A stretch of DNA of 62,923 bases, counting the filler, from Octopus bimaculoides (taxonomy: Eukaryota), in assembly GCF_001194135.2 (NCBI RefSeq). It is 4 parts of 4 records of this genome, joined end to end, with 100 filler letters (N's around TTAATTAATTAA, not from the genome) between each part and the next. Parts side by side here need not be neighbours in the genome. Positions count along the whole stretch, not along the records: positions 27,782 to 53,788 come from NC_068983.1; 3 more parts are not named here. The stretch is one strand, 5' to 3'. Positions 27,929 through 52,484 of the stretch are shown one piece after another. Numbering within the stretch: the stretch's first letter is position 1; each line of letters opens with the position of its first letter. The position numbers were made by a program, and so were the translations under genes. The notes below the pieces were generated by a model. It ran no database searches. It saw nothing but the letters and a program-made list of their open reading frames with translations, and had not been told where the DNA came from.

Positions 27929-28417
27929 TGTGTGTGTGTATTATAGACTTCGTATCATGAATTTAAATGACCATGTACACAGTCAGAAAAATAGTTAGAT
28001 AAAGAAAGAGAGAGACACATGGTCGGTAGTGTTGTTTATTTCTAAATCAGATCTAATCGAACATAGCAAAATTCAAAAATATCTCAACCATGACTTCTCC
28101 GTCTCATTCATATAAACAGGGAAACCAGGACTCCATCATCCAATTCATTCCTTTTCTTTACTTTTCTTTTAATTTAAGTTTCTCATTCGTACAGATGATA
28201 TTGTCTGACTTAAGAAAAGATTTCGGTGTGATATCTAGAACGGCTGATAATTACTTATATGCCAAACCCCTGCAAAGCCGAGATGATGGATGCTATTTCG
28301 ATGATAACTATAATGTGTAATAAGTCTGTTACGCACATTAGCTATCACCTTCACAGTGAGTAATCAAACTGAGTGTTCGAAATATATTATAATGTTACAA
28401 TACCAGTAATTTTAGCG

Positions 28418-28929
28418 GATGGGACCAGTCAATTAGATCGACCCAGTACGCAACTGGTTCTAAATTTATCGACCCCGAAACGATGAGTGGCAAAGTCAAC
28501 CTCGGCGGAATTTGAACTCAGAATATCAAAGCAGACGAAATACCATTAAGCGGTTCGCCCGACGTGTTAAAGTTTCTTATTTCTTTACTGCCCACAAGGG
28601 GCTGCACACAGAGGGAACAAACAAGGACAGACAAACGGATTAAGTCGATTATATCGACGCCAGTGCGTAACTGGTATTTAATTTATCGACCACGAAAGGA
28701 TGAAAGGTAAAGTCGACCTCGGCGGAATTTGAACTCAGAACGTAACGGCAGACGAAATACCTATTTCGTTATTGCCCACAAGAGGCTAAACATAGAGGGA
28801 ACAAACAAGAACAGACGAACGGATTAAGTCGATTACATCAACCCCAGTGCGTTACTGGTACTTAATTTATCGACCCGGAAAGGATGAAAGACAAAGTCGA
28901 CCTCGGCGGAATTTGAACTCAGAACGTAA
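28418..28929 (-). mobile_element. Tandem array of SINE family B units (~184-bp period, at least three cores, runs into a gap)
   Basis: Repeated GCCCACAAG.GGCT...GGATTAAGTCGATT...GGATGAAAG..AAAGTCGACCTCGGCGGAATTTGAACTCAGAACGTAA; GCCCAC starts at 28590 and 28774. Confidence 0.9.
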
Positions 28930-29350
28930 NNNNNNNNNNNNNNNNNNNNNNNNNNNNNNNNNNNNNNNNNNNNNNNNNNNNNNNNNNNNNNNNNNNNNNN
29001 NNNNNNNNNNNNNNNNNNNNNNNNNNNNNNNNNNNNNNNNNNNNNNNNNNNNNNNNNNNNNNNNNNNNNNNNNNNNNNNNNNNNNNNNNNNNNNNNNNNN
29101 NNNNNNNNNNNNNNNNNNNNNNNNNNNNNNNNNNNNNNNNNNNNNNNNNNNNNNNNNNNNNNNNNNNNNNNNNNNNNNNNNNNNNNNNNNNNNNNNNNNN
29201 NNNNNNNNNNNNNNNNNNNNNNNNNNNNNNNNNNNNNNNNNNNNNNNNNNNNNNNNNNNNNNNNNNNNNNNNNNNNNNNNNNNNNNNNNNNNNNNNNNNN
29301 NNNNNNNNNNNNNNNNNNNNNNNNNNNNNNNNNNNNNNNNNNNNNNNNNN

Positions 29351-29384
<34 letters not shown>

Positions 29385-30926
29385 GAACAGGCACACAATC
29401 TCGGTTACTTTCTCTGTCTGTCTCTCTGCCTCTCTCTCTCTCTCACTCGCTCCCTCTCATACATATATGTTTCATGCGAGTCTGAGTGAGCATATGCGTA
29501 TTTAGACGTATATATGAATATAATTGTGTGCGTATAGGTATATGTACGTGTGTGTGTGTGTGTGTGGACGTGTGTGCGGATATGTAAATTGGTACATGTG
29601 TATGGCTTCATATATGTGCACACAAATAGGAGTGTGTGCGGGTGAGCATGTATATGTTTCACGCAAGTGTGAGTGAGCATATGCATATACGCACATGTAC
29701 GTGGGTGTGCGTGCGCGCATGTGTATGTATGTACATACGCGCATACGCGTATTCTATGAGCGTTTTTCACTTTCTCCCCTTCGGGTTTTTCCCTTTATTT
29801 AACGGTCATTTTCGTAGTATTTCTGTTTGTCTTAATAACTGACGAGATGCCGGAGCTGATTTCGCCCCCATCCCGATATCTCGTAGTTTTATGATGGCAA
29901 CCGAATAATTGTCACATATTATATTACAGATAAATTCCTCTCTTTTCATAATATCGAGGTCTCATTCATTCTTTTGTTGTCATGCTATTACTATTGATAT
30001 ATGTATATATATATATATATATATNNNNNNNNNNNNNNNNNNNNNNNNNNNNNNNNNNNNNNNNNNNNNNNNNNNNNNNNNNNNNNNNNNNNNNNNNNNN
30101 NNNNNNNNNNNNNNNNNNNNNNNNNNNNNNNNNNNNNNNNNNNNNNNNNNNNNNNNNNNNNNNNNNNNNNNNNNNNNNNNNNNNNNNNNNNNNNNNNNNN
30201 NNNNNNNNNNNNNNNNNNNNNNNNNNNNNNNNNNNNNNNNNNNNNNNNNNNNNNNNNNNNNNNNNNNNNNNNNNNNNNNNNNNNNNNNNNNNNNNNNNNN
30301 NNNNNNNNNNNNNNNNNNNNNNNNNNNNNNNNNNNNNNNNNNNNNNNNNNNNNNNNNNNNNNNNNNNNNNNNNNNNNNNNNNNNNNNNNNNNNNNNNNNN
30401 NNNNNNNNNNNNNNNNNNNNNNNNNNNNNNNNNNNNNNNNNNNNNNNNNNNNNNNNNNNNNNNNNNNNNNNNNNNNNNNNNNNNNNNNNNNNNNNNNNNN
30501 NNNNNNNNNNNNNNNNNNNNNNNNNNNNNNNNNNNNNNNNNNNNNNNNNNNNNNNNNNNNNNNNNNNNNNNNNNNNNNNNNNNNNNNNNNNNNNNNNNNN
30601 NNNNNNNNNNNNNNNNNNNNNNNNNNNNNNNNNNNNNNNNNNNNNNNNNNNNNNNNNNNNNNNNNNNNNNNNNNNNNNNNNNNNNNNNNNNNNNNNNNNN
30701 NNNNNNNNNNNNNNNNNNNNNNNNNNNNNNNNNNNNNNNNNNNNNNNNNNNNNNNNNNNNNNNNNNNNNNNNNNNNNNNNNNNNNNNNNNNNNNNNNNNN
30801 NNNNNNNNNNNNNNNNNNNNNNNNNNNNNNNNNNNNNNNNNNNNNNNNNNNNNNNNNNNNNNNNNNNNNNNNNNNNNNNNNNNNNNNNNNNNNNNNNNNN
30901 NNNNNNNNNNNNNNNNATATATATAT

Positions 30927-40500: not shown

Positions 40501-40574
40501 AGAGAAAAAGTAACGCACACACACATGCATATATTCTTTTCTACTCTAGGCAGAAAGCCTGAAATTTTGTGGAG

Positions 40575-40750
40575 GAGACTAGTCGATTAGATCGACCCCA
40601 GTACGCAACTTGTACTTAATTTATCGAACTCGAAAGGATAAAAGGTAAAATTGACCTGGGCGAAATTTGAACTCAGAATGTAAGGACAGATAAAATACCG
40701 ATAAGCATTTCACCCGGTGGGCTAACGTTTCTGCCAGCTCGCTGCCTTCA
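40575..40750 (-). mobile_element. SINE family B copy with tRNA-like head
   Basis: Reverse complement starts AAGGCAGCGAGCTGGCAGAAACGTTAGC...CTGAGTTCAAATTTCGCC (A/B-box-like), then the central domain. Confidence 0.85.
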
Positions 40751-41150: not shown

Positions 41151-41979
41151 ATAGCACGTGTGTCGATAAAAGAATTAGTCTTCAATGTCATTGAAAGTAT
41201 AGGGCTAAATTTATCAAATAACATAGGTATGGAACACCTATAGACAAGACTCTCACTTTCTGTGCGAACAATTCAGTGAATCAAGCACTTCATCACCTTT
41301 TGTATGTTTAATATTCAACACTTGTAAATGTTCATTAAAGATGCAACGGCTCTGGCTGATATGCATATATATANNNNNNNNNNNNNNNNNNNNNNNNNNN
41401 NNNNNNNNNNNNNNNNNNNNNNNNNNNNNNNNNNNNNNNNNNNNNNNNNNNNNNNNNNNNNNNNNNNNNNNNNNNNNNNNNNNNNNNNNNNNNNNNNNNN
41501 NNNNNNNNNNNNNNNNNNNNNNNNNNNNNNNNNNNNNNNNNNNNNNNNNNNNNNNNNNNNNNNNNNNNNNNNNNNNNNNNNNNNNNNNNNNNNNNNNNNN
41601 NNNNNNNNNNNNNNNNNNNNNNNNNNNNNNNNNNNNNNNNNNNNNNNNNNNNNNNNNNNNNNNNNNNNNNNNNNNNNNNNNNNNNNNNNNNNNNNNNNNN
41701 NNNNNNNNNNNNNNNNNNNNNNNNNNNNNNNNNNNNNNNNNNNNNNNNNNNNNNNNNNNNNNNNNNNNNNNNNNNNNNNNNNNNNNNNNNNNNNNNNNNN
41801 NNNNNNNNNNNNNNNNNNNNNNNNNNNNNNNNNNNNNNNNNNNNNNNNNNNNNNNNNNNNNNNNNNNNNNNNNNNNNNNNNNNNNNNNNNNNNNNNNNNN
41901 NNNNNNNNNNNNNNNNNNNNNNNNNNNNNNNNNNNNNNNNNNNNNNNNNNNNNNNNNNNNNNNNNNNNNNNNNNNNNNN

Positions 41980-42046
<67 letters not shown>

Positions 42047-42104
42047 GTGCGTGTGTGCGTGCGTGTATGTATTTATAAATGTATGTATGTATCTGCATTT
42101 ATGT

Positions 42105-42270
42105 ATGAGTATGAGAAGGTTTACTTCAGTTTTTGCCTATCAAATCCACTCACAAGTCTTTGGTCTGCCAGGTGCTACAGTTAAAAAACTTGCTCATGGT
42201 GCCGCACAGCCGGACTGAATCCAAGGCCACATTGTTGGGAAGCAAGCTTCTTAAAGACTCAGCCACACAG
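42105..42270 (-). mobile_element. SINE family A head, diverged
   Basis: CAAATCCACTCACAAG...GTTGGGAAGCAAGCTTCTT...CAGCCAC, adjacent to (TA)(TG)n. Confidence 0.7.
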
Positions 42271-45059: not shown

Positions 45060-45212
45060 TTATATAGCTTACTTCCAAACCTCATGGTTCTGGATTCAGT
45101 CCTACTGCGTGACACCTTGAGGAGATATTTCTACTACAGAGCTGGGCCGGCCGAAGACTTGTGAGTGGATTTGCTAGGGGGAGACTGAAAAATTCCCCTC
45201 GTGTATATATAT

Positions 45213-45245
<33 letters not shown>
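45060..45245 (+). mobile_element. SINE family A head running into (TA)n and a gap
   Basis: GATTCAGTCCTACTGCGTGACACCTTGAGG...GCCGAAGACTTGTGAGTGGATTTG...CTCGTGTATATA. Confidence 0.75.
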
Positions 45246-45771
45246 NNNNNNNNNNNNNNNNNNNNNNNNNNNNNNNNNNNNNNNNNNNNNNNNNNNNNNN
45301 NNNNNNNNNNNNNNNNNNNNNNNNNNNNNNNNNNNNNNNNNNNNNNNNNNNNNNNNNNNNNNNNNNNNNNNNNNNNNNNNNNNNNNNNNNNNNNNNNNNN
45401 NNNNNNNNNNNNNNNNNNNNNNNNNNNNNNNNNNNNNNNNNNNNNNNNNNNNNNNNNNNNNNNNNNNNNNNNNNNNNNNNNNNNNNNNNNNNNNNNNNNN
45501 NNNNNNNNNNNNNNNNNNNNNNNNNNNNNNNNNNNNNNNNNNNNNNNNNNNNNNNNNNNNNNNNNNNNNNNNNNNNNNNNNNNNNNNNNNNNNNNNNNNN
45601 NNNNNNNNNNNNNNNNNNNNNNNNNNNNNNNNNNNNNNNNNNNNNNNNNNNNNNNNNNNNNNNNNNNNNNNNNNNNNNNNNNNNNNNNNNNNNNNNNNNN
45701 NNNNNNNNNNNNNNNNNNNNNNNNNNNNNNNNNNNNNNNNNNNNNNNNNNNNNNNNAGATATATATATATA

Positions 45772-46910: not shown

Positions 46911-47784
46911 NNNNNNNNNNNNNNNNNNNNNNNNNNNNNNNNNNNNNNNNNNNNNNNNNNNNNNNNNNNNNNNNNNNNNNNNNNNNNNNNNNNNNNNNNN
47001 NNNNNNNNNNNNNNNNNNNNNNNNNNNNNNNNNNNNNNNNNNNNNNNNNNNNNNNNNNNNNNNNNNNNNNNNNNNNNNNNNNNNNNNNNNNNNNNNNNNN
47101 NNNNNNNNNNNNNNNNNNNNNNNNNNNNNNNNNNNNNNNNNNNNNNNNNNNNNNNNNNNNNNNNNNNNNNNNNNNNNNNNNNNNNNNNNNNNNNNNNNNN
47201 NNNNNNNNNNNNNNNNNNNNNNNNNNNNNNNNNNNNNNNNNNNNNNNNNNNNNNNNNNNNNNNNNNNNNNNNNNNNNNNNNNNNNNNNNNNNNNNNNNNN
47301 NNNNNNNNNNNNNNNNNNNNNNNNNNNNNNNNNNNNNNNNNNNNNNNNNNNNNNNNNNNNNNNNNNNNNNNNNNNNNNNNNNNNNNNNNNNNNNNNNNNN
47401 NNNNNNNNNNNNNNNNNNNNNNNNNNNNNNNNNNNNNNNNNNNNNNNNNNNNNNNNNNNNNNNNNNNNNNNNNNNNNNNNNNNNNNNNNNNNNNNNNNNN
47501 NNNNNNNNNNNNNNNNNNNNNNNNNNNNNNNNNNNNNNNNNNNNNNNNNNNNNNNNNNNNNNNNNNNNNNNNNNNNNNNNNNNNNNNNNNNNNNNNNNNN
47601 NNNNNNATACAAAACATGTCATAACATTTCTATAACATAATCATTCTTACGGCCGTTTCCGATTCCAATGACAATCGGTGCTGAGGAAGCAATTACGAAA
47701 ATAATACTCTTTACCCTCATGGGACATTCGATCTATTACACGGAACTTCATTAGAGTGAATACAAATGTGTGTATATATATATA

Positions 47785-48286
47785 TACGTGCATAAGGGAT
47801 GACCACTAGGTGGACATCCGATATGCTAGAAAGAGGTCATCAACGACCCAACCACAAAGAAAAATAATGTTCTCCAGAAAAATTTCGCTAAGCACCAGAA
47901 CAGGACAAAATGAGAAATATACAGAATAAAGAATTATCTATGTACTGCAGTTTCGAACAGTAACGTTTTACTTACGTAACAACATCCGTGTTCTCATCAG
48001 CATAGACGTTCTAGAATCAATATAATTTGCAGAACTATACACGAATTGTCTTCATGAAATAAGACTTGCATATAGTTCTACCGATTACATTGGGGCTATT
48101 TTTCAAAATGCCTCAGCTCCGGCGCGCAAATAGATAATTCTTTGTTCTGTATATTTCTCAATTTGTCCTGTTCTGGTGTTTTGCGAAATTTTTCTGGAGA
48201 ACATTATTTTTCTTTGTGGTTGGGTCGTTGATCACCTCTTTCTAGCATATTGGTTGTCCACCTAGTGGTCATCCCTTAAACACGTG
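47785..48286. mobile_element. 502-bp TA-flanked inverted-repeat element (157-bp arms) carrying a hammerhead ribozyme
   Basis: Arms 47785-47941 and 48130-48286 are reverse complements with 10 mismatches by my count; TA on both flanks; no ORF; hammerhead in the spacer abutting the left arm. Confidence 0.9.
47936..48007 (-). ncRNA. Type I hammerhead ribozyme, intact catalytic core
   Basis: Minus strand GTCTATG-CTGATGA-GAACA[cggatgtt GTTACGT aagtaaa ACGTTAC]TGTTC-GAAAC-TGCA-GTA^CATAGAT: 7-bp stem I, G-C-closed stem II, stem III with palindromic UGCA loop, GUA cleavage triplet. Confidence 0.9.
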
Positions 48287-48498
48287 TAATACAATTTTTT
48301 TCTGAATTTTCAGATTTTTTTATATGCTACGCCACTTGATTTTGAATTAATATTCAATTTATCACCCTATCCAGTAGTACTATTATACTTACTTCTAGGT
48401 TCGTGTCTGGGCTACTGTGGTGTGTGAAGAGATAATTGAAAAAAATGGAGTCAATAAGAGAGAGAACGGTTGGATATTTATTTGCAATCACTACAATT

Positions 48499-48955
48499 GT
48501 TTCTACGCAACGTAATTCTCCAGGCGTGCAGGTACTCGATTATGCAAACGTTTCTTTGCCTTATGAGATCTAGTTTCCTCAGACAATATGTAAATATTGT
48601 TTCCGTAAGTTCAAATGCTTCAAGAGCAACCTTTTTGTCTGTCGTGGCCTGAAGTTAGTAATCACTGAGTTTATCAAGGTGTGTTTTTGCTGAAGGACCG
48701 TTGGCAAACTGCTGAAGGACCGTGGGCAAATTGCTTGCCAACAGTCTTTCAGCAACAACACACTGTGATACACCAATGACTACTACTAAATTCAGGCCAA
48801 GACAAACACAGATGAAATTCTTGAAGCCGAGAATTTGAACTTACGGAGACAATATTTACATATCACCCGAAGAAACACAAGTAGATCTCGTAACGCAGGG
48901 AAACTGTTGCATAATCAAGTACCTGCCCGCCTGGAGAACTAAGTTTGAAAGAAAC
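48499..48955. repeat. Old inverted-repeat element (~160-bp diverged arms, 48499-48660 and 48784-48955) with a 22-bp tandem duplication in the spacer
   Basis: Shared blocks TTTGAACTTACGG.ACAATATTTACATAT and TTGCATAATC.AGTACCTGC.CGCCTGGAGAA in opposite orientations. Confidence 0.7.
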
Positions 48956-51827
48956 GTAGGTAAATTTGTCTTCACAGTTCGACAAATGAATGTAAAACTC
49001 TGAACTCTGAATCGACCTAAAACCCGAGTTCATTTCAATAATTATACTAATCTCCCGAGAGTTAACCAAGTGGTCATCATAATATAAATTATTAATGGAA
49101 AAGTAGGCAGTTTCTATGCTTTACCAGTATTGCATTGAATTCGTAGCCATGACACAAATCTCAATCCAGTCAGCCTAGATAAATTTAATATGAATAAATC
49201 GTTATTACTCAAATCAAGTGTACCGTAATATTGGCGTTTGCTTAATTAAATTTTAGTACCGAGTTCAACTTTCCTTGGTATAACTAGGAGAAGATTAGAC
49301 TCCGGAACATCTAGTTCGTTTGCCTGAGGTACACATAGACTCCCACACTCCATCTTTTCATTGCTGCCCTTTCCATTCAGTATGTTAAGGAACTTGTTTC
49401 TCCATAAGCTTCTCAAATATCAATGGCCCTTTCTTTTTCAAGTATCCCTTTACCTAACAGCAGACACCCACAAAAGGTGTTTTTCTAACTAAATTCTTGT
49501 AAATTTAATTATTTGATTTCATAACAGGAAAGAAACAGAAATATCAAATGTTAAAAACTTGTAGTTGTTTGTGTCTTAACCGGAAGTCATAAACCTTACT
49601 GAATAGCATCCGGTGACATCAGTAGAGGGAATTAAGAGATAAGGGATAATTCGGTTGGAACTTCTTATCTTCGTTTCCTTTTATTCAAAATAAACATCAG
49701 GAATTACGTTGTTTTTTTAATATTATTTATCTTCCAGTCATAGAGGATGTCTCTACCTACTAAAGTTTCTTTTATAATTTCATTAAACATTAACAACGCA
49801 CACAATACATTTATTACGTTGAAGCTGCTATCTGATTTGGGTTGGTATCAAATTAAAAGAAAATTCTGCTTCGAAATCGAGAAAGTTCTCTGAAGAATTA
49901 AGTTTCTTTGTCTTTTAAGTTTCTAGATTTTTATTCATCTTATTATTTTATACTTTTATATGTTTTAGCCCAAAGAATGTGGCTTTGCCTGAGCACTGCC
50001 AGTGTAATCACCTTTTCAATGGTCATTCTATTGTAATTTCATCTGGAATCGTGGAGAGCAGACACCAGAAGTTCTTCAATAAAACTTTTAAGTCTGATCA
50101 GGAAAGCAGAAGATTTGAAAATAGATGCCAAAATTTATAAATTCGAAAACGTTTTTAGATATTTCAATTCACGTGAAGTGTTGTTGAATTGCTGTATTAA
50201 TGTGAAATGATTTTGTGGAATATGCCAGAAGAGTTTCTAGTGGAATATGTTAGAAGAGTTTCGATCTGTACAATTGAGGGTTCTCAAGCAGATAGCTCAC
50301 AACGATTAGAAATTTAACGTTTTGAACAAACTTAAAACAAATTTGTCGAAGCCCTGAATAATGATTTGCAGTAAATTTGAACGCAGCAGGAAGCTCACGC
50401 TATCTCATTGTACTAACTTCCTCAGCATTATAACGACAGTATCTCTTTGAAGAAACATTTATATATTATCTACTGGTAAATAAAAAAAAGAGGATTTACA
50501 AAGTTTACATGAATGTTGACAACAAATTCAGCCGTCAGAAAGCCATACTATAACTAGCAGACAAGAAACCCATAGAGACAATATTACTTGTTTGTGTAAG
50601 ATTGCAGCCACTGAAAACATCAAAGCTAAAAATACGACTTTCACATCCGGGTGGAAATTCTCTTTATCAAAATGAAATCAAGCCACATACGTACAGCTGC
50701 TCTTTTCGGAGGTTGGATGTCGGTATTGCCGTTACATATAATTTTTATTCAGTACGACTCAGAATCCAACGATAGGATAGAATTGCTATAACGGTGATTA
50801 TAAAATGCGTTACGCAGTGATATCTTCAAATACAAAGTTGTTACCTGTTGAAATCTACTTGATGCATATCCGATCCCTTAAGCAAGCCATTCATTGTGTT
50901 TTGTCATGGAGAAAATTTCTCACTGTATAGTAACAGTTGTAAATACAGCGAATCGGCTCGCAGTGCTACCTGACCAGCCTGTGGGGTGCATTGCATTTCG
51001 GAGTTGTTATCTCCTCTTTAGCCACAGAAACCAGACAAGGCGGGCTCTGCGAGCAGCCAACAGAGACTGTATCTCTCTTATGATATACCCGCCATCGTAC
51101 AATTTTCAACATCGTGTTAAAGCTTATGCAAACGTTTAGAATAGTTACGCAGTATTTTAAGTCGTCATCAACAAGTGAAAGGACTTGGAGGAAACAAGCT
51201 AAAAGCTTCTAGTCGTTGTAAGCACATTCTCAGTGTGGGAATTCTTAAGTGGATACGGCTAAAAGTATTAAATACTTAGATAATTGACGAAAGCCGTTTT
51301 GGAATTTAGGTATTCAGCAAATCTATTGTTCACACTCAATGCTAAGAGCTACGATAAGGATATCTGTGATTTCTAAAGATAAAAATCATACTGAGTAGCA
51401 TCTCTTTTTTCCACAAATATCGTTGTAAATTAGAAGTGCGTCATATGCGCATCTTAAACTCCAGTAAATAAATACAGTATATATATATATATATNNNNNN
51501 NNNNNNNNNNNNNNNNNNNNNNNNNNNNNNNNNNNNNNNNNNNNNNNNNNNNNNNNNNNNNNNNNNNNNNNNNNNNNNNNNNNNNNNNNNNNNNNNNNNN
51601 NNNNNNNNNNNNNNNNNNNNNNNNNNNNNNNNNNNNNNNNNNNNNNNNNNNNNNNNNNNNNNNNNNNNNNNNNNNNNNNNNNNNNNNNNNNNNNNNNNNN
51701 NNNNNNNNNNNNNNNNNNNNNNNNNNNNNNNNNNNNNNNNNNNNNNNNNNNNNNNNNNNNNNNNNNNNNNNNNNNNNNNNNNNNNNNNNNNNNNNNNNNN
51801 NNNNNNNNNNNNNNNNNNNNNNNNNNT

Positions 51828-52484
51828 ATTGCTCTCAGTTGTGGTCACCAAACAGTGTTAAGCGGACAGCAGAACTCGAGGCGATTCAGAGGCACTATAC
51901 AAAAAAGATCGCCACAGTCCAGCAGATGAACTACAGGGAGCAACTGCAGGCACTAGGTCTCTACTCGCTGGAGCGCAGGCGGGAGAGATATGTAATAATA
52001 TACATATGGAAAATACTGGAAGAACTGGTACCAAACTTTGGCATCAAGTACTACACGAATGCCCGCACAGGTCGCCACTGCATGGTACCAAGGGTATCGT
52101 CCACTGCATCTCGCATAAGAACAAGGTACTGCAACAGCCTCGGTTTCAGAGGACCTCAGCTCTTTAATGCCCTGCCAAAACATTTGAGAGACCTGCAAGA
52201 CATGGATATAGAAGTCTTCAAAACAAAACTCGACGCTTTCCTCTCCACGATACCAGACGAACCAATGGCTCGAAATGAGACACAGATTAGGGCAGCGATG
52301 TCAAATTCTCTTATACACCAGATGTGCCATCAAAATTCTTTATTTGATTATATCAGGTGGAGGAGAAGAGCCATGCAAGGAACGTGAAGAGAGCACAGCA
52401 TGAAGACGGAAAGTCACGGTGGTGCTCCAGCATGACCACAGCCACTTGGCTGAAACTCATAAATAAATAAATAAATAAATAAAT
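51828..52484 (+). mobile_element. CR1-clade LINE 3' end with (TAAA)n tail
   Basis: YCSQLWSP...LEAIQRHYTKKI...YREQLQALGLYSLERRRERYVIIYIWKIL...FNALPKHLR...FKTKLDAFLSTIPDEP; ORF open from the gap to the stop at 52387; 3'UTR and (TAAA)n. Confidence 0.93.

What the first reader, a model, noticed from the sequence alone, without database searches (positions are those of the whole stretch)
47785..48286. MITE-like palindrome containing a hammerhead ribozyme, with its second arm starting at the cleavage site
Seen in sequence: the element has 157-bp inverted arms (10 mismatches), TA on both flanks and no ORF. The minus strand of the spacer holds a type I hammerhead with an intact core (7-bp stem I, CUGAUGA, stem II, GAAAC-UGCA-GUA^). 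The predicted 3' cleavage product starts CATAGATAATTC at 47942, and the right arm starts ATAGATAATTC at 48130, within 1 nt of that product's 5' end. Both arms end at the same outer point. Established: type I hammerheads with palindromic stem III loops typify Penelope-like pLTRs and retrozymes, and PLEs form head-to-head inverted structures. Inference: this is a non-autonomous ribozyme-processed retroelement whose insertion joined a cDNA of self-cleaved RNA head-to-head with a longer uncleaved copy, mimicking a DNA MITE. The alternative is a true MITE family that has captured a ribozyme.
Basis: partly seen in the sequence, partly recalled or inferred. Interest (0 to 1): 0.9.

Follow-up and report, generated by a model that had tools for sequence, protein, structure and literature searches.

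The report
Hammerhead ribozyme retroelement inserted head-to-head
A 506-bp palindrome in an octopus-like genome holds an intact-looking self-cleaving hammerhead ribozyme, and its second arm begins 1 nt from the predicted cut site, which suggests (from this one locus only) that ribozyme-cut RNA was copied back into DNA.

Summary
Arms 47783-47941 and 48130-48288 are 159 nt with 10 mismatches and flank a 188-nt spacer. The minus strand carries a complete type I hammerhead (48012-47930). It is the only descriptor match in the 26-kb piece and none appeared in 400 simulated pieces. Predicted cleavage is between 47943 and 47942. The right arm starts at the base matching 47941, and homology stops abruptly there.

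Helix I of the ribozyme spans the spacer/left-arm junction. So spacer plus left arm (347 nt) is the original unit, and the right arm is an inverted partial copy of the part 3' of the cut site.

The best reading is a non-autonomous ribozyme-bearing retroelement (retrozyme or Penelope-dependent kind). It would have inserted head-to-head by reverse transcription primed on both DNA strands, with the short copy a run-off on self-cleaved RNA.

This fits published Penelope-like element behaviour but rests on a single locus. I found no other copy anywhere. No Rfam family reached its gathering score. The TA flanks are uninformative, and a 7-bp AATACAA duplication is an alternative. A MITE, or a chance boundary after local inverted duplication, is not excluded. 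I rate it a new member of a known kind, of moderate interest.

The parts
47783..47941 (-). Left arm. It is the 3' part of the long (347-nt) copy, downstream of the predicted ribozyme cut. Its inner 12 nt form the 3' strand of helix I.
   Evidence: Inverted repeat I1; arm alignment with 10 mismatches.
47930..48012 (-). Type I hammerhead ribozyme motif, 83 nt. Helix I is 48007-48001 paired with 47942-47936, plus an AGAA/UUCU extension. Core CUGAUGA is 48000-47994. Extended helix II is 47993-47955. GAAA is 47954-47951. Helix III is C-UGCA-G, 47950-47945. U16.1 is 47944 and A17 is 47943.
   Evidence: Sequence; fold; unique descriptor hit with 0 in 400 simulations; dimer cofold with an 8-bp ACUGCAGU helix III. 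Rfam gives only a sub-threshold RF03152 match.
47942..47943 (-). Predicted self-cleavage site, between A17 (47943) and C1.1 (47942).
   Evidence: Position follows from the hammerhead core numbering. Cleavage itself was not tested.
47942..48129 (-). 188-nt spacer. It is the 5' part of the long copy and holds the ribozyme core and an upstream 22-bp hairpin. It has no counterpart next to the right arm.
   Evidence: no homology upstream of the right arm.
48018..48092 (-). Strong hairpin inside the spacer, upstream of the ribozyme.
   Evidence: Inverted repeat I5; present in the MFE folds.
48130..48288 (+). Right arm. It is an inverted partial copy that begins at the base matching 47941, 1 nt after the predicted 5' end of the 3' cleavage product. 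It ends at the same outer point as the left copy.
47790..47826 (-). Hairpin 7 nt from the 3' (outer) end of the long copy (GCAUAUCGGAUGUCCACCUAGUGGUCAUCCCUUAUGC). It is a candidate site for reverse-transcriptase recognition or initiation. It is degraded in the right copy.
   Evidence: Folds. The role is inferred by analogy with the stem-loop RT start of the Anolis Poseidon PLE 'PAc' (PMC11167929).
47759..47765 (.). Candidate target-site duplication AATACAA, left copy. It is separated from the arm by the 17-nt (TG)3(TA)n tract at 47766-47782.
   Evidence: shuffle p about 0.04.
48288..48294 (.). Candidate target-site duplication AATACAA, right copy. It overlaps the last arm base, 48288.

Best explanation
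The locus is one insertion of a short, non-coding, hammerhead-bearing retroelement. It is of the animal non-LTR retrozyme or Penelope-dependent kind, in an octopod-like genome.

The functional unit is the 347-nt minus-strand sequence 48129 to 47783. It comprises 188 nt with a hairpin and the ribozyme, then 159 nt ending just after a 3' hairpin. Its RNA is highly structured. It can cleave itself between 47943 and 47942, most likely as a dimer through the palindromic ACUGCAGU helix III.

At integration an element-encoded or borrowed RT/endonuclease nicked both strands of an AT-rich target. It then primed reverse transcription on both strands from the same internal start point in the RNA. One cDNA copied an uncleaved RNA for 347 nt. 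The other ran off the 5' end of a self-cleaved RNA after 159 nt. Joining the two cDNA ends produced a head-to-head structure that looks like a MITE.

Shown directly: the sequence anatomy, the chance statistics, the sharp breakpoint, and the direction of copying (helix I spans the junction of the long copy only).

Inferred: ribozyme activity, the RNA intermediate, dual-strand priming, and which protein did the work.
For: - The hammerhead is complete and is the only one in the piece, with 0 hits in 400 simulated pieces.
- Core, G10.1-C11.1, A15.1-U16.1 and GUA^C are all canonical.
- Helix III of 2 bp plus the palindromic loop UGCA matches the description of metazoan type I hammerheads (PMC4209133). 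The predicted dimer forms an 8-bp intermolecular helix III, at -48.1 against 2 x -20.4 kcal/mol.
- Per PMC7229834, most classical animal type I hammerheads lie in non-LTR retrozymes. The mussel units there are about 350-390 bp, of low GC and highly self-paired. This unit is 347 nt and 38% GC, with fold z = -5.2 linear and -5.3 circular.
- Geometry: 3' ends outward and identical, 5' ends inward and different. PLE insertions often carry an adjacent inverted 5'-truncated copy and prefer (TA)n or AT-rich targets (PMC8557442). The purified PLE protein of Anolis ('PAc') cleaves and extends both strands, starting RT at a fixed internal stem-loop about 85-92 nt downstream of the hammerhead cut (PMC11167929).
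- The inner breakpoint lies 1 nt from the cut site and is sharp. A random breakpoint along 347 nt would land within +/-1 nt about 1% of the time.
- A candidate 7-bp duplication in AT-rich DNA fits target-primed insertion better than a TA-only duplication.
- The arms are 94% identical, not 100%, so this is not an assembler-made palindrome.
Against: - This is a single locus. No second copy was found in the 26-kb piece, in 82 kb of Octopus vulgaris and other invertebrate DNA, or in protein or DNA collections. Family structure, covariation and a 5'-end pile-up are therefore untested.
- No Rfam hammerhead model reaches threshold.
- There is no tandem repeat, no pLTR-like direct repeat, and no RT or GIY-YIG ORF of a PLE nearby.
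- The first base of the expected run-off copy (C) is missing or changed to A at 48129.
- In the only biochemical study, hammerhead cleavage was not needed for insertion in vitro, and no RNA-seq ends mapped to the cut site (PMC11167929).
- The coincidence was noticed post hoc.
- A second, unrelated palindrome lies 220 bp away. Local palindrome formation by DNA-level processes is therefore plausible here.
Confidence: 0.5

Rival explanations
1. A retroelement unit with a later DNA-level inverted duplication. The 347-nt hammerhead unit is a genuine retro-insertion or remnant. The right arm arose afterwards by replication template switching or break repair, and its boundary next to the cut site is coincidence.
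For: A second palindrome with no ribozyme lies 220 bp downstream (48509-48945, 75% self-complementary). This shows that inverted duplications form locally. Short palindromes sit at both ends of the spacer (ACTGCAGT at 47944-47951 and a GCGCGC tract near 48119-48126). The coincidence was found post hoc.
Against: A random breakpoint within +/-1 nt of the cut site has about 1% probability. Fold-back priming at ACTGCAGT would place the symmetry axis at that palindrome. In fact the junction lies 188 nt away, at the far end of the spacer. Both copies also share the same outer end, which a random segmental duplication does not predict.
Confidence: 0.22
2. A true DNA-transposon MITE or foldback element whose loop has acquired a hammerhead. 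It would be moved by a transposase that recognises the terminal inverted repeats.
For: Long, well-matched inverted arms, small size, no ORF, TA at both ends, and an AT-rich target.
Against: - Helix I joins the spacer to one arm only. The spacer and left arm were therefore one contiguous ribozyme unit before the second arm existed.
- 159-bp arms with a sharp inner edge at a ribozyme cut site have no explanation under DNA transposition.
- The termini (TACGTG / CACGTG) match no superfamily signature I know.
- TA is uninformative here, and AATACAA is an alternative duplication.
- No transposase remnant is in the piece.
- A full-text search found no report of a hammerhead in a MITE.
Confidence: 0.15
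3. The hammerhead-like motif is inactive or fortuitous, and the palindrome is an ordinary inverted repeat or hairpin-RNA locus.
For: No Rfam hit at gathering score. The best hammerhead match is 18.6 bits, E = 2.1. Helix II is unusually long (39 nt), and the monomer helix III is only 2 bp. No conservation data exist.
Against: All invariant core positions and three helices are present. There were 0 matches in about 18 Mb of simulated sequence, even with a relaxed descriptor. The palindromic helix III is the typical animal form.
Confidence: 0.08
4. Assembly artefact. The inverted copy was created by the assembler in a gap-rich draft scaffold.
For: A 696-nt N gap ends 177 bp upstream (46911-47606). 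PLE-type structures are known to trouble short-read assemblies (PMC8557442).
Against: The arms differ at 10 of 159 positions, and the flanks are unique sequence. Assembler palindromes are normally identical.
Confidence: 0.03

Closest known systems
Animal non-LTR retrozymes (Cervera & de la Pena 2020, PMC7229834), such as the mussel units of about 350-390 bp
   Same: - Type I hammerhead with a tiny palindromic helix III.
- Non-coding unit of 347 nt at 38% GC.
- Strongly self-paired RNA (z about -5).
- Mollusc host.
   Different: Retrozymes are defined by head-to-tail tandem repeats from which monomers are excised and circularised. Here there is one unit plus an inverted partial copy and no tandem. 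Helix II is much longer than the canonical 4 bp. No circRNA evidence is available.
Penelope-like element (PLE) insertions: pLTR with hammerhead plus an adjacent inverted 5'-truncated copy (PMC8557442, PMC4209133, PMC11167929)
   Same: - Hammerhead-bearing retroelement.
- Head-to-head arrangement with common 3' ends.
- AT-rich or (TA)n target.
- An RT start a fixed distance downstream of the hammerhead cut, as shown in vitro for the Anolis Poseidon PLE 'PAc'.
   Different: - No RT/GIY-YIG ORF and no pLTR direct repeat.
- The element is only 347 nt, so at most a non-autonomous dependant.
- The inverted copy's 5' end sits at the ribozyme cut site. The PLE papers I read do not report this, and PAc did not need cleavage for insertion.
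Schistosoma Sm-alpha and newt satellite 2 hammerhead repeats
   Same: Short (about 330 nt) non-coding repeats carrying an active type I hammerhead that works best as a dimer. This comparison rests on my own knowledge and on mentions.
   Different: Those are dispersed SINE-like or tandem satellite copies. No inverted head-to-head copy bounded by the cleavage site has been described for them.
Tc1/mariner-type MITEs and foldback elements
   Same: About 500 bp, long inverted arms, no ORF, TA at both ends.
   Different: One arm is contiguous with a ribozyme whose helix I spans the arm boundary. The termini are not of a recognised superfamily. No family copies or transposase were found.

Membership tests
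Hammerhead ribozyme, type I | Invariant core C3 U4 G5 A6 N7 G8 A9 / G12 A13 A14 / A15.1-U16.1 / H17 | tested here: met
   CUGAUGA at 48000-47994, GAAA at 47954-47951, U at 47944 and A17 at 47943.
Hammerhead ribozyme, type I | Three helices around the core, helix I open-ended, G10.1-C11.1 closing helix II | tested here: met
   Helix I is 7 bp plus a 4-bp extension. Helix II is 5 bp plus an extended hairpin. Helix III is 2 bp plus the UGCA loop.
Hammerhead ribozyme, type I | Score at or above the gathering threshold of an Rfam hammerhead model | tested here: not met
   No hit at gathering score. RF03152 gave 18.6 bits against a threshold of 56.3, and RF00163 was absent even at E <= 10. The 39-nt helix II and minimal helix III probably explain this.
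Hammerhead ribozyme, type I | Conservation and compensatory changes among homologues | not testable with these tools
   No homologous copy was found.
Hammerhead ribozyme, type I | Site-specific self-cleavage | not testable with these tools
   Needs in vitro transcription.
Animal non-LTR retrozyme | Head-to-tail tandem repeats, each with a hammerhead | tested here: not met
   There is only one hammerhead and no direct repeat of the unit in the piece.
Animal non-LTR retrozyme | Non-coding monomer of about 170-400 nt, low GC, highly self-paired | tested here: met
   347 nt at 38% GC; MFE -106.4 with z = -5.2, and circular fold z = -5.3. The monomer length is assumed, not proven.
Animal non-LTR retrozyme | Expressed as linear and circular monomer RNA | not testable with these tools
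   No transcript data are available.
Penelope-like element insertion | ORF with a telomerase-like RT and a GIY-YIG endonuclease | tested here: not met
   No Pfam domain in any six-frame ORF of the piece. The element could only be non-autonomous.
Penelope-like element insertion | pLTR formed by partial direct tandem duplication | tested here: not met
   No direct repeat of the spacer or arm.
Penelope-like element insertion | Adjacent inverted 5'-truncated copy sharing the 3' end | tested here: met
   The right arm has the same outer end and a shorter inner extent. Feature as described in PMC8557442.
Penelope-like element insertion | AT-rich or microsatellite target, with an optional 30-40 bp tail at one end | tested here: inconclusive
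   The left flank is (TG)3(TA)n. A 17-nt simple-repeat stretch lies between the candidate duplication and the arm, and it may equally be target DNA.
MITE (Tc1/mariner-like) | Terminal inverted repeats | tested here: met
   159-nt arms, although far longer than typical.
MITE (Tc1/mariner-like) | TA target-site duplication | tested here: inconclusive
   TA is present at both ends. However, it is self-complementary and lies inside a TA microsatellite, and AATACAA is an alternative.
MITE (Tc1/mariner-like) | Many copies with fixed ends, and termini shared with an autonomous transposon | not testable with these tools
   The host genome is not searchable here. There are no copies or transposase in the piece.

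The most novel reading that the evidence does not exclude
The palindrome records one 347-nt retrozyme RNA used in both of its topologies at a single integration event.

The long copy (48129 to 47783) would be exactly one full turn around the circular RNA, from a fixed internal RT start. Synthesis would halt when the polymerase met its own primer. The short copy (48130-48288) would be a run-off from the same start on the hammerhead-linearised monomer. The two would be primed on opposite strands of one staggered break.

If so, such MITE-like palindromes are genomic footprints of in vivo hammerhead cleavage and of circRNA templating. They would give a sequence-only way to measure how often ribozyme-processed RNAs feed retrotransposition.
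Probability: 0.15. Interest if true: 0.7.

Novelty: new member of a known kind. Interest (0 to 1): 0.42.

Why it matters
The role of hammerheads in the life cycle of Penelope-like elements and animal retrozymes is unsettled. The one biochemical study found cleavage dispensable for insertion in vitro, and saw no RNA ends at the cut site (PMC11167929). An integrated copy whose 5' end sits at the cleavage site would be direct genomic evidence that self-cleaved RNA is reverse-transcribed in vivo.

If the pattern recurs genome-wide, it would turn an open mechanistic question into a simple survey of junction positions. It would also warn annotators that some apparent MITEs are head-to-head retro-insertions. 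As a single locus it is only a lead.

Tried and rejected
- **Rfam.** The gathering-score scan of the piece gave nothing. The E-value scan of 47700-48400 gave only weak matches.
- **Other copies in the piece.** blastn with word size 7 found none, and the self-comparison found none.
- **Copies via spurious ORF calls.** All open segments of 20 codons or more from six frames of the element were joined with X spacers and searched against 5.8 billion proteins. There were no hits.
- **Exact arm 19- and 20-mers** in metagenome, prokaryote-genome and viral contigs gave 0 hits.
- **Generic pattern CTGATGAG-N10-40-CGAAACTGCAGTA in metagenomes.** This gave 22 bacterial contigs. In the 20 scanned, none was an Rfam hammerhead, so I treated them as chance matches.
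- **Host identification.** The RT-tail ORF 51839-52387 hits an Octopus vulgaris protein at 65%. SINE-like repeats match an O. vulgaris chromosome at 75-86%.
- **More host-like DNA.** 82 kb of O. vulgaris and another invertebrate assembly held no element copy and no hammerhead.
- **Pfam on six-frame ORFs of the piece**, to find exons for an orthologous empty site or transposase or PLE remnants, gave nothing.
- **tRNA and bacterial promoter/terminator scans** were uninformative.
- **Rejected: spacer inserted into an older palindrome.** The 7-bp helix I between spacer and arm would then be a chance match.
- **Rejected: fold-back priming at ACTGCAGT.** The junction is at the other end of the spacer.
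- **Rejected: twin priming.** That yields non-overlapping segments, not duplicates.
- **Not done.** I did not use the third protein search to fish for octopus PLEs. The hit list would be dominated by other taxa, so the expected yield was low.

Full report
**Observation.** The repeat finder reports arms 47783-47941 and 48130-48288, 159 nt, 94% complementary and 188 nt apart. A base-by-base comparison gives 10 mismatches.

On the minus strand the spacer and the inner end of the left arm read AGAA-C-GUCUAUG CUGAUGA GAACA...UGUUC GAAA C-UGCA-G UA^CAUAGAU-AA-UUCU, spanning 48012 to 47930. This has every invariant hammerhead position, a G10.1-C11.1 pair, an A15.1-U16.1 pair and a GUA cleavage triplet. 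Predicted cleavage is between 47943 and 47942.

**Is it more than chance?** I wrote a relaxed descriptor: CUGANGA, helix II of at least 4 bp, GAAA, helix III of at least 1 bp, UH, and helix I of at least 5 bp. It finds exactly one hit in the 26-kb piece, this one, with helices of 7, 5 and 2 bp. It finds none in 400 first-order-Markov simulations of the piece.

Rfam does not recognise the motif. There is no match at gathering score. In E-value mode the only hammerhead match is RF03152, at 18.6 bits and E = 2.1. I attribute this to the 39-nt helix II and the minimal helix III, but it counts as a failed formal membership test.

Thermodynamic folding recovers helices I and II and a 4-bp extension of helix I beyond a 1x2 internal loop. 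Two copies of the domain are predicted to dimerise through an 8-bp intermolecular ACUGCAGU helix III, at -48.1 against 2 x -20.4 kcal/mol. This is the architecture described for animal type I hammerheads (PMC4209133).

**The boundary.** The arms are identical over their first 14 inner positions. Immediately beyond them the two sides share nothing: the local alignment score of the 80 nt upstream is 10, below the shuffle mean of 13.2. The inner edge is therefore a real breakpoint, not decayed homology.

The 5' strand of helix I lies in the spacer and its 3' strand lies in the left arm. Spacer plus left arm must therefore have been one contiguous ribozyme-bearing unit of 347 nt. The right arm is the derived, partial, inverted copy of the segment 3' of the cut. 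This argues against the spacer having been inserted into an older palindrome. A breakpoint placed at random along 347 nt would fall within +/-1 nt of the cut about 1% of the time, although the coincidence was noticed after the fact.

**The unit.** The 347-nt RNA is 38% GC and folds far better than shuffles. The linear fold is -106.4 kcal/mol with z = -5.2, and the circular fold has z = -5.3. It has a 22-bp hairpin upstream of the ribozyme and a hairpin close to its 3' end (47826-47790), which is intact in the long copy and degraded in the short one. It has no ORF. The longest open frame is 43 codons, and the arm differences are all non-synonymous.

**Surroundings and host.** The piece is gap-rich draft sequence. 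One N run ends 177 bp upstream of the element. It is full of TG/TA microsatellites.

An ORF at 51839-52387 is the C-terminal tail of a LINE-type RT, and its named relative is an Octopus vulgaris protein at 65% identity. SINE-like repeats in the piece match an O. vulgaris chromosome at 75-86%. So the host is an octopod or a close relative. No Pfam domain is found in any six-frame ORF of the piece, which means no transposase, PLE RT or GIY-YIG nearby.

The only other palindrome in the piece lies 220 bp downstream (48509-48945). It is 75% self-complementary, has no spacer and has no hammerhead.

**Flanks.** TA is present outside both arms. It is uninformative because TA is its own complement and the left flank is (TG)3(TA)n. 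A 7-bp direct repeat, AATACAA, lies at 47759-47765 and at 48288-48294, overlapping the last base of the right arm. A match this good and this close to the arm end occurs in 4% of shuffles. If it is real, it favours target-primed insertion over TA-specific transposition. It would also leave a 17-nt simple-repeat stretch at one end only.

**Search for other copies.** None was found:
- in the piece;
- among 5.8 billion predicted proteins, queried with all open segments of the element;
- by exact arm 19- and 20-mers in metagenome, prokaryote-genome or viral contigs;
- in 82 kb of O. vulgaris and another invertebrate assembly.

A generic hammerhead-like pattern scan of metagenomes returned only bacterial contigs. 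In the 20 scanned there was no Rfam hammerhead. The host genome is not available to these tools. The tests that would decide the matter (family structure, 5'-end pile-up, covariation) could not be run.

**Comparison with what is known.**
- Most classical animal type I hammerheads lie in non-autonomous non-LTR retrozymes. Their monomers are 170-400 nt, of low GC and highly self-paired. The mussel units are about 350-390 bp (PMC7229834).
- A 2026 preprint argues that these derive from PLE pLTRs (10.64898/2026.07.22.740005).
- PLE insertions often carry an inverted 5'-truncated copy head-to-head and favour (TA)n or AT-rich targets (PMC8557442).
- The purified PLE protein of Anolis cleaves and extends both DNA strands. 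It starts reverse transcription at one internal stem-loop about 85-92 nt downstream of the hammerhead cut (PMC11167929).

This is the geometry needed here: two cDNAs primed from opposite strands, both starting at the same RNA position (the shared outer ends), with their 5' limits meeting in the middle. A full-text search found no report of a hammerhead inside a MITE.

**Mechanism proposed.** A 347-nt (or longer) hammerhead RNA is transcribed from a source copy, and part of the pool self-cleaves at GUA^C. At an AT-rich target both strands are nicked. Reverse transcription starts on each strand at the 3' hairpin region. One cDNA copies uncleaved RNA through the ribozyme to 48129. The other stops at the 5'-OH end created by the ribozyme, after 159 nt. 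The two cDNA ends are then joined.

The anatomy, statistics and direction of copying are shown here. Activity, the RNA intermediate, dual priming and the mobilising protein are inferred.

A bolder version holds that the 347 nt is one full turn of a circular monomer and the 159 nt is a run-off on the linear form. It predicts that in tandem copies elsewhere ...CACGTATA is followed by TTGCGCGCCGG.

**Rivals.**
- A later DNA-level inverted duplication with a chance boundary. This is supported by the neighbouring palindrome. It is weakened by the 1% coincidence, the shared outer end, and the junction lying 188 nt from the ACTGCAGT palindrome.
- A true MITE. This is consistent with shape and TA, but it does not explain helix I spanning one arm boundary or the breakpoint at the cut.
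- An inactive, fortuitous motif. The simulations make this unlikely.
- An assembly artefact. This is unlikely because the arms differ at 10 positions.

**Verdict.** The element is best filed as a new member of the known class of hammerhead-bearing animal retroelements, in a PLE-like head-to-head insertion. It is not a tandem retrozyme, and it is not an autonomous PLE, because those defining features were tested and not met.

The point of interest is the breakpoint at the cleavage site. If it recurs genome-wide, it would be direct evidence that self-cleaved RNA is a template for retrotransposition.

Noticed in passing
window 48509-48945 (arms reported from 48499 to 48955): A second, older palindrome lies 220 bp downstream of the element. 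It is about 75-85% self-complementary over about 440 bp and has no spacer. Its centre holds two direct copies and one inverted copy of a 22-nt unit (48688-48731). It has no hammerhead, no similarity to the element and no clear target-site duplication.
   Followed up: partly
window 47759-47765 and 48288-48294: A 7-bp direct repeat AATACAA brackets the element plus a 17-nt (TG)3(TA)n tract. It is a possible target-site duplication (shuffle p about 0.04).
   Followed up: partly
window 51839-52387 (+): A 182-aa ORF that is the C-terminal tail of a LINE-type reverse transcriptase. It has no Pfam hit. Its best named relative is an Octopus vulgaris hypothetical protein at 65% identity. It lies just after an N gap (51495-51826), so it is probably truncated by the assembly.
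   Followed up: partly
window 28408-28929, 40530-40748, 45061-45243, 42066-42256: SINE-like dispersed repeats, partly tandem at 28.4-28.9 kb. They match an Octopus vulgaris chromosome (L023) at 75-86% identity. ARAGORN finds no tRNA-like part.
   Followed up: partly
window 28930-29350, 30025-30916, 41374-41979, 45246-45756, 46911-47606, 51495-51826: Six N gaps, mostly bordered by (TA)n. One ends 177 bp upstream of the element, so the local assembly is incomplete. The long 'repeats' reported are N runs and microsatellites, not real repeats.
   Followed up: yes
L001-L022 (metagenome contigs): The pattern CTGATGAG-N10-40-CGAAACTGCAGTA matches a 53-nt stretch recurring in many human-gut bacterial contigs, several with a T-box leader nearby. 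No Rfam hammerhead was found in the 20 loci scanned. It is probably a conserved bacterial gene segment unrelated to this finding.
   Followed up: partly
L024-L026 (ENA assembly ERZ26052378): This 'metagenome' assembly holds Mb-scale contigs at about 30x coverage. They carry LINE RT and endonuclease fragments related (40-49% identity) to the window's RT tail, so they come from a eukaryotic host genome rather than from microbes.
   Followed up: no
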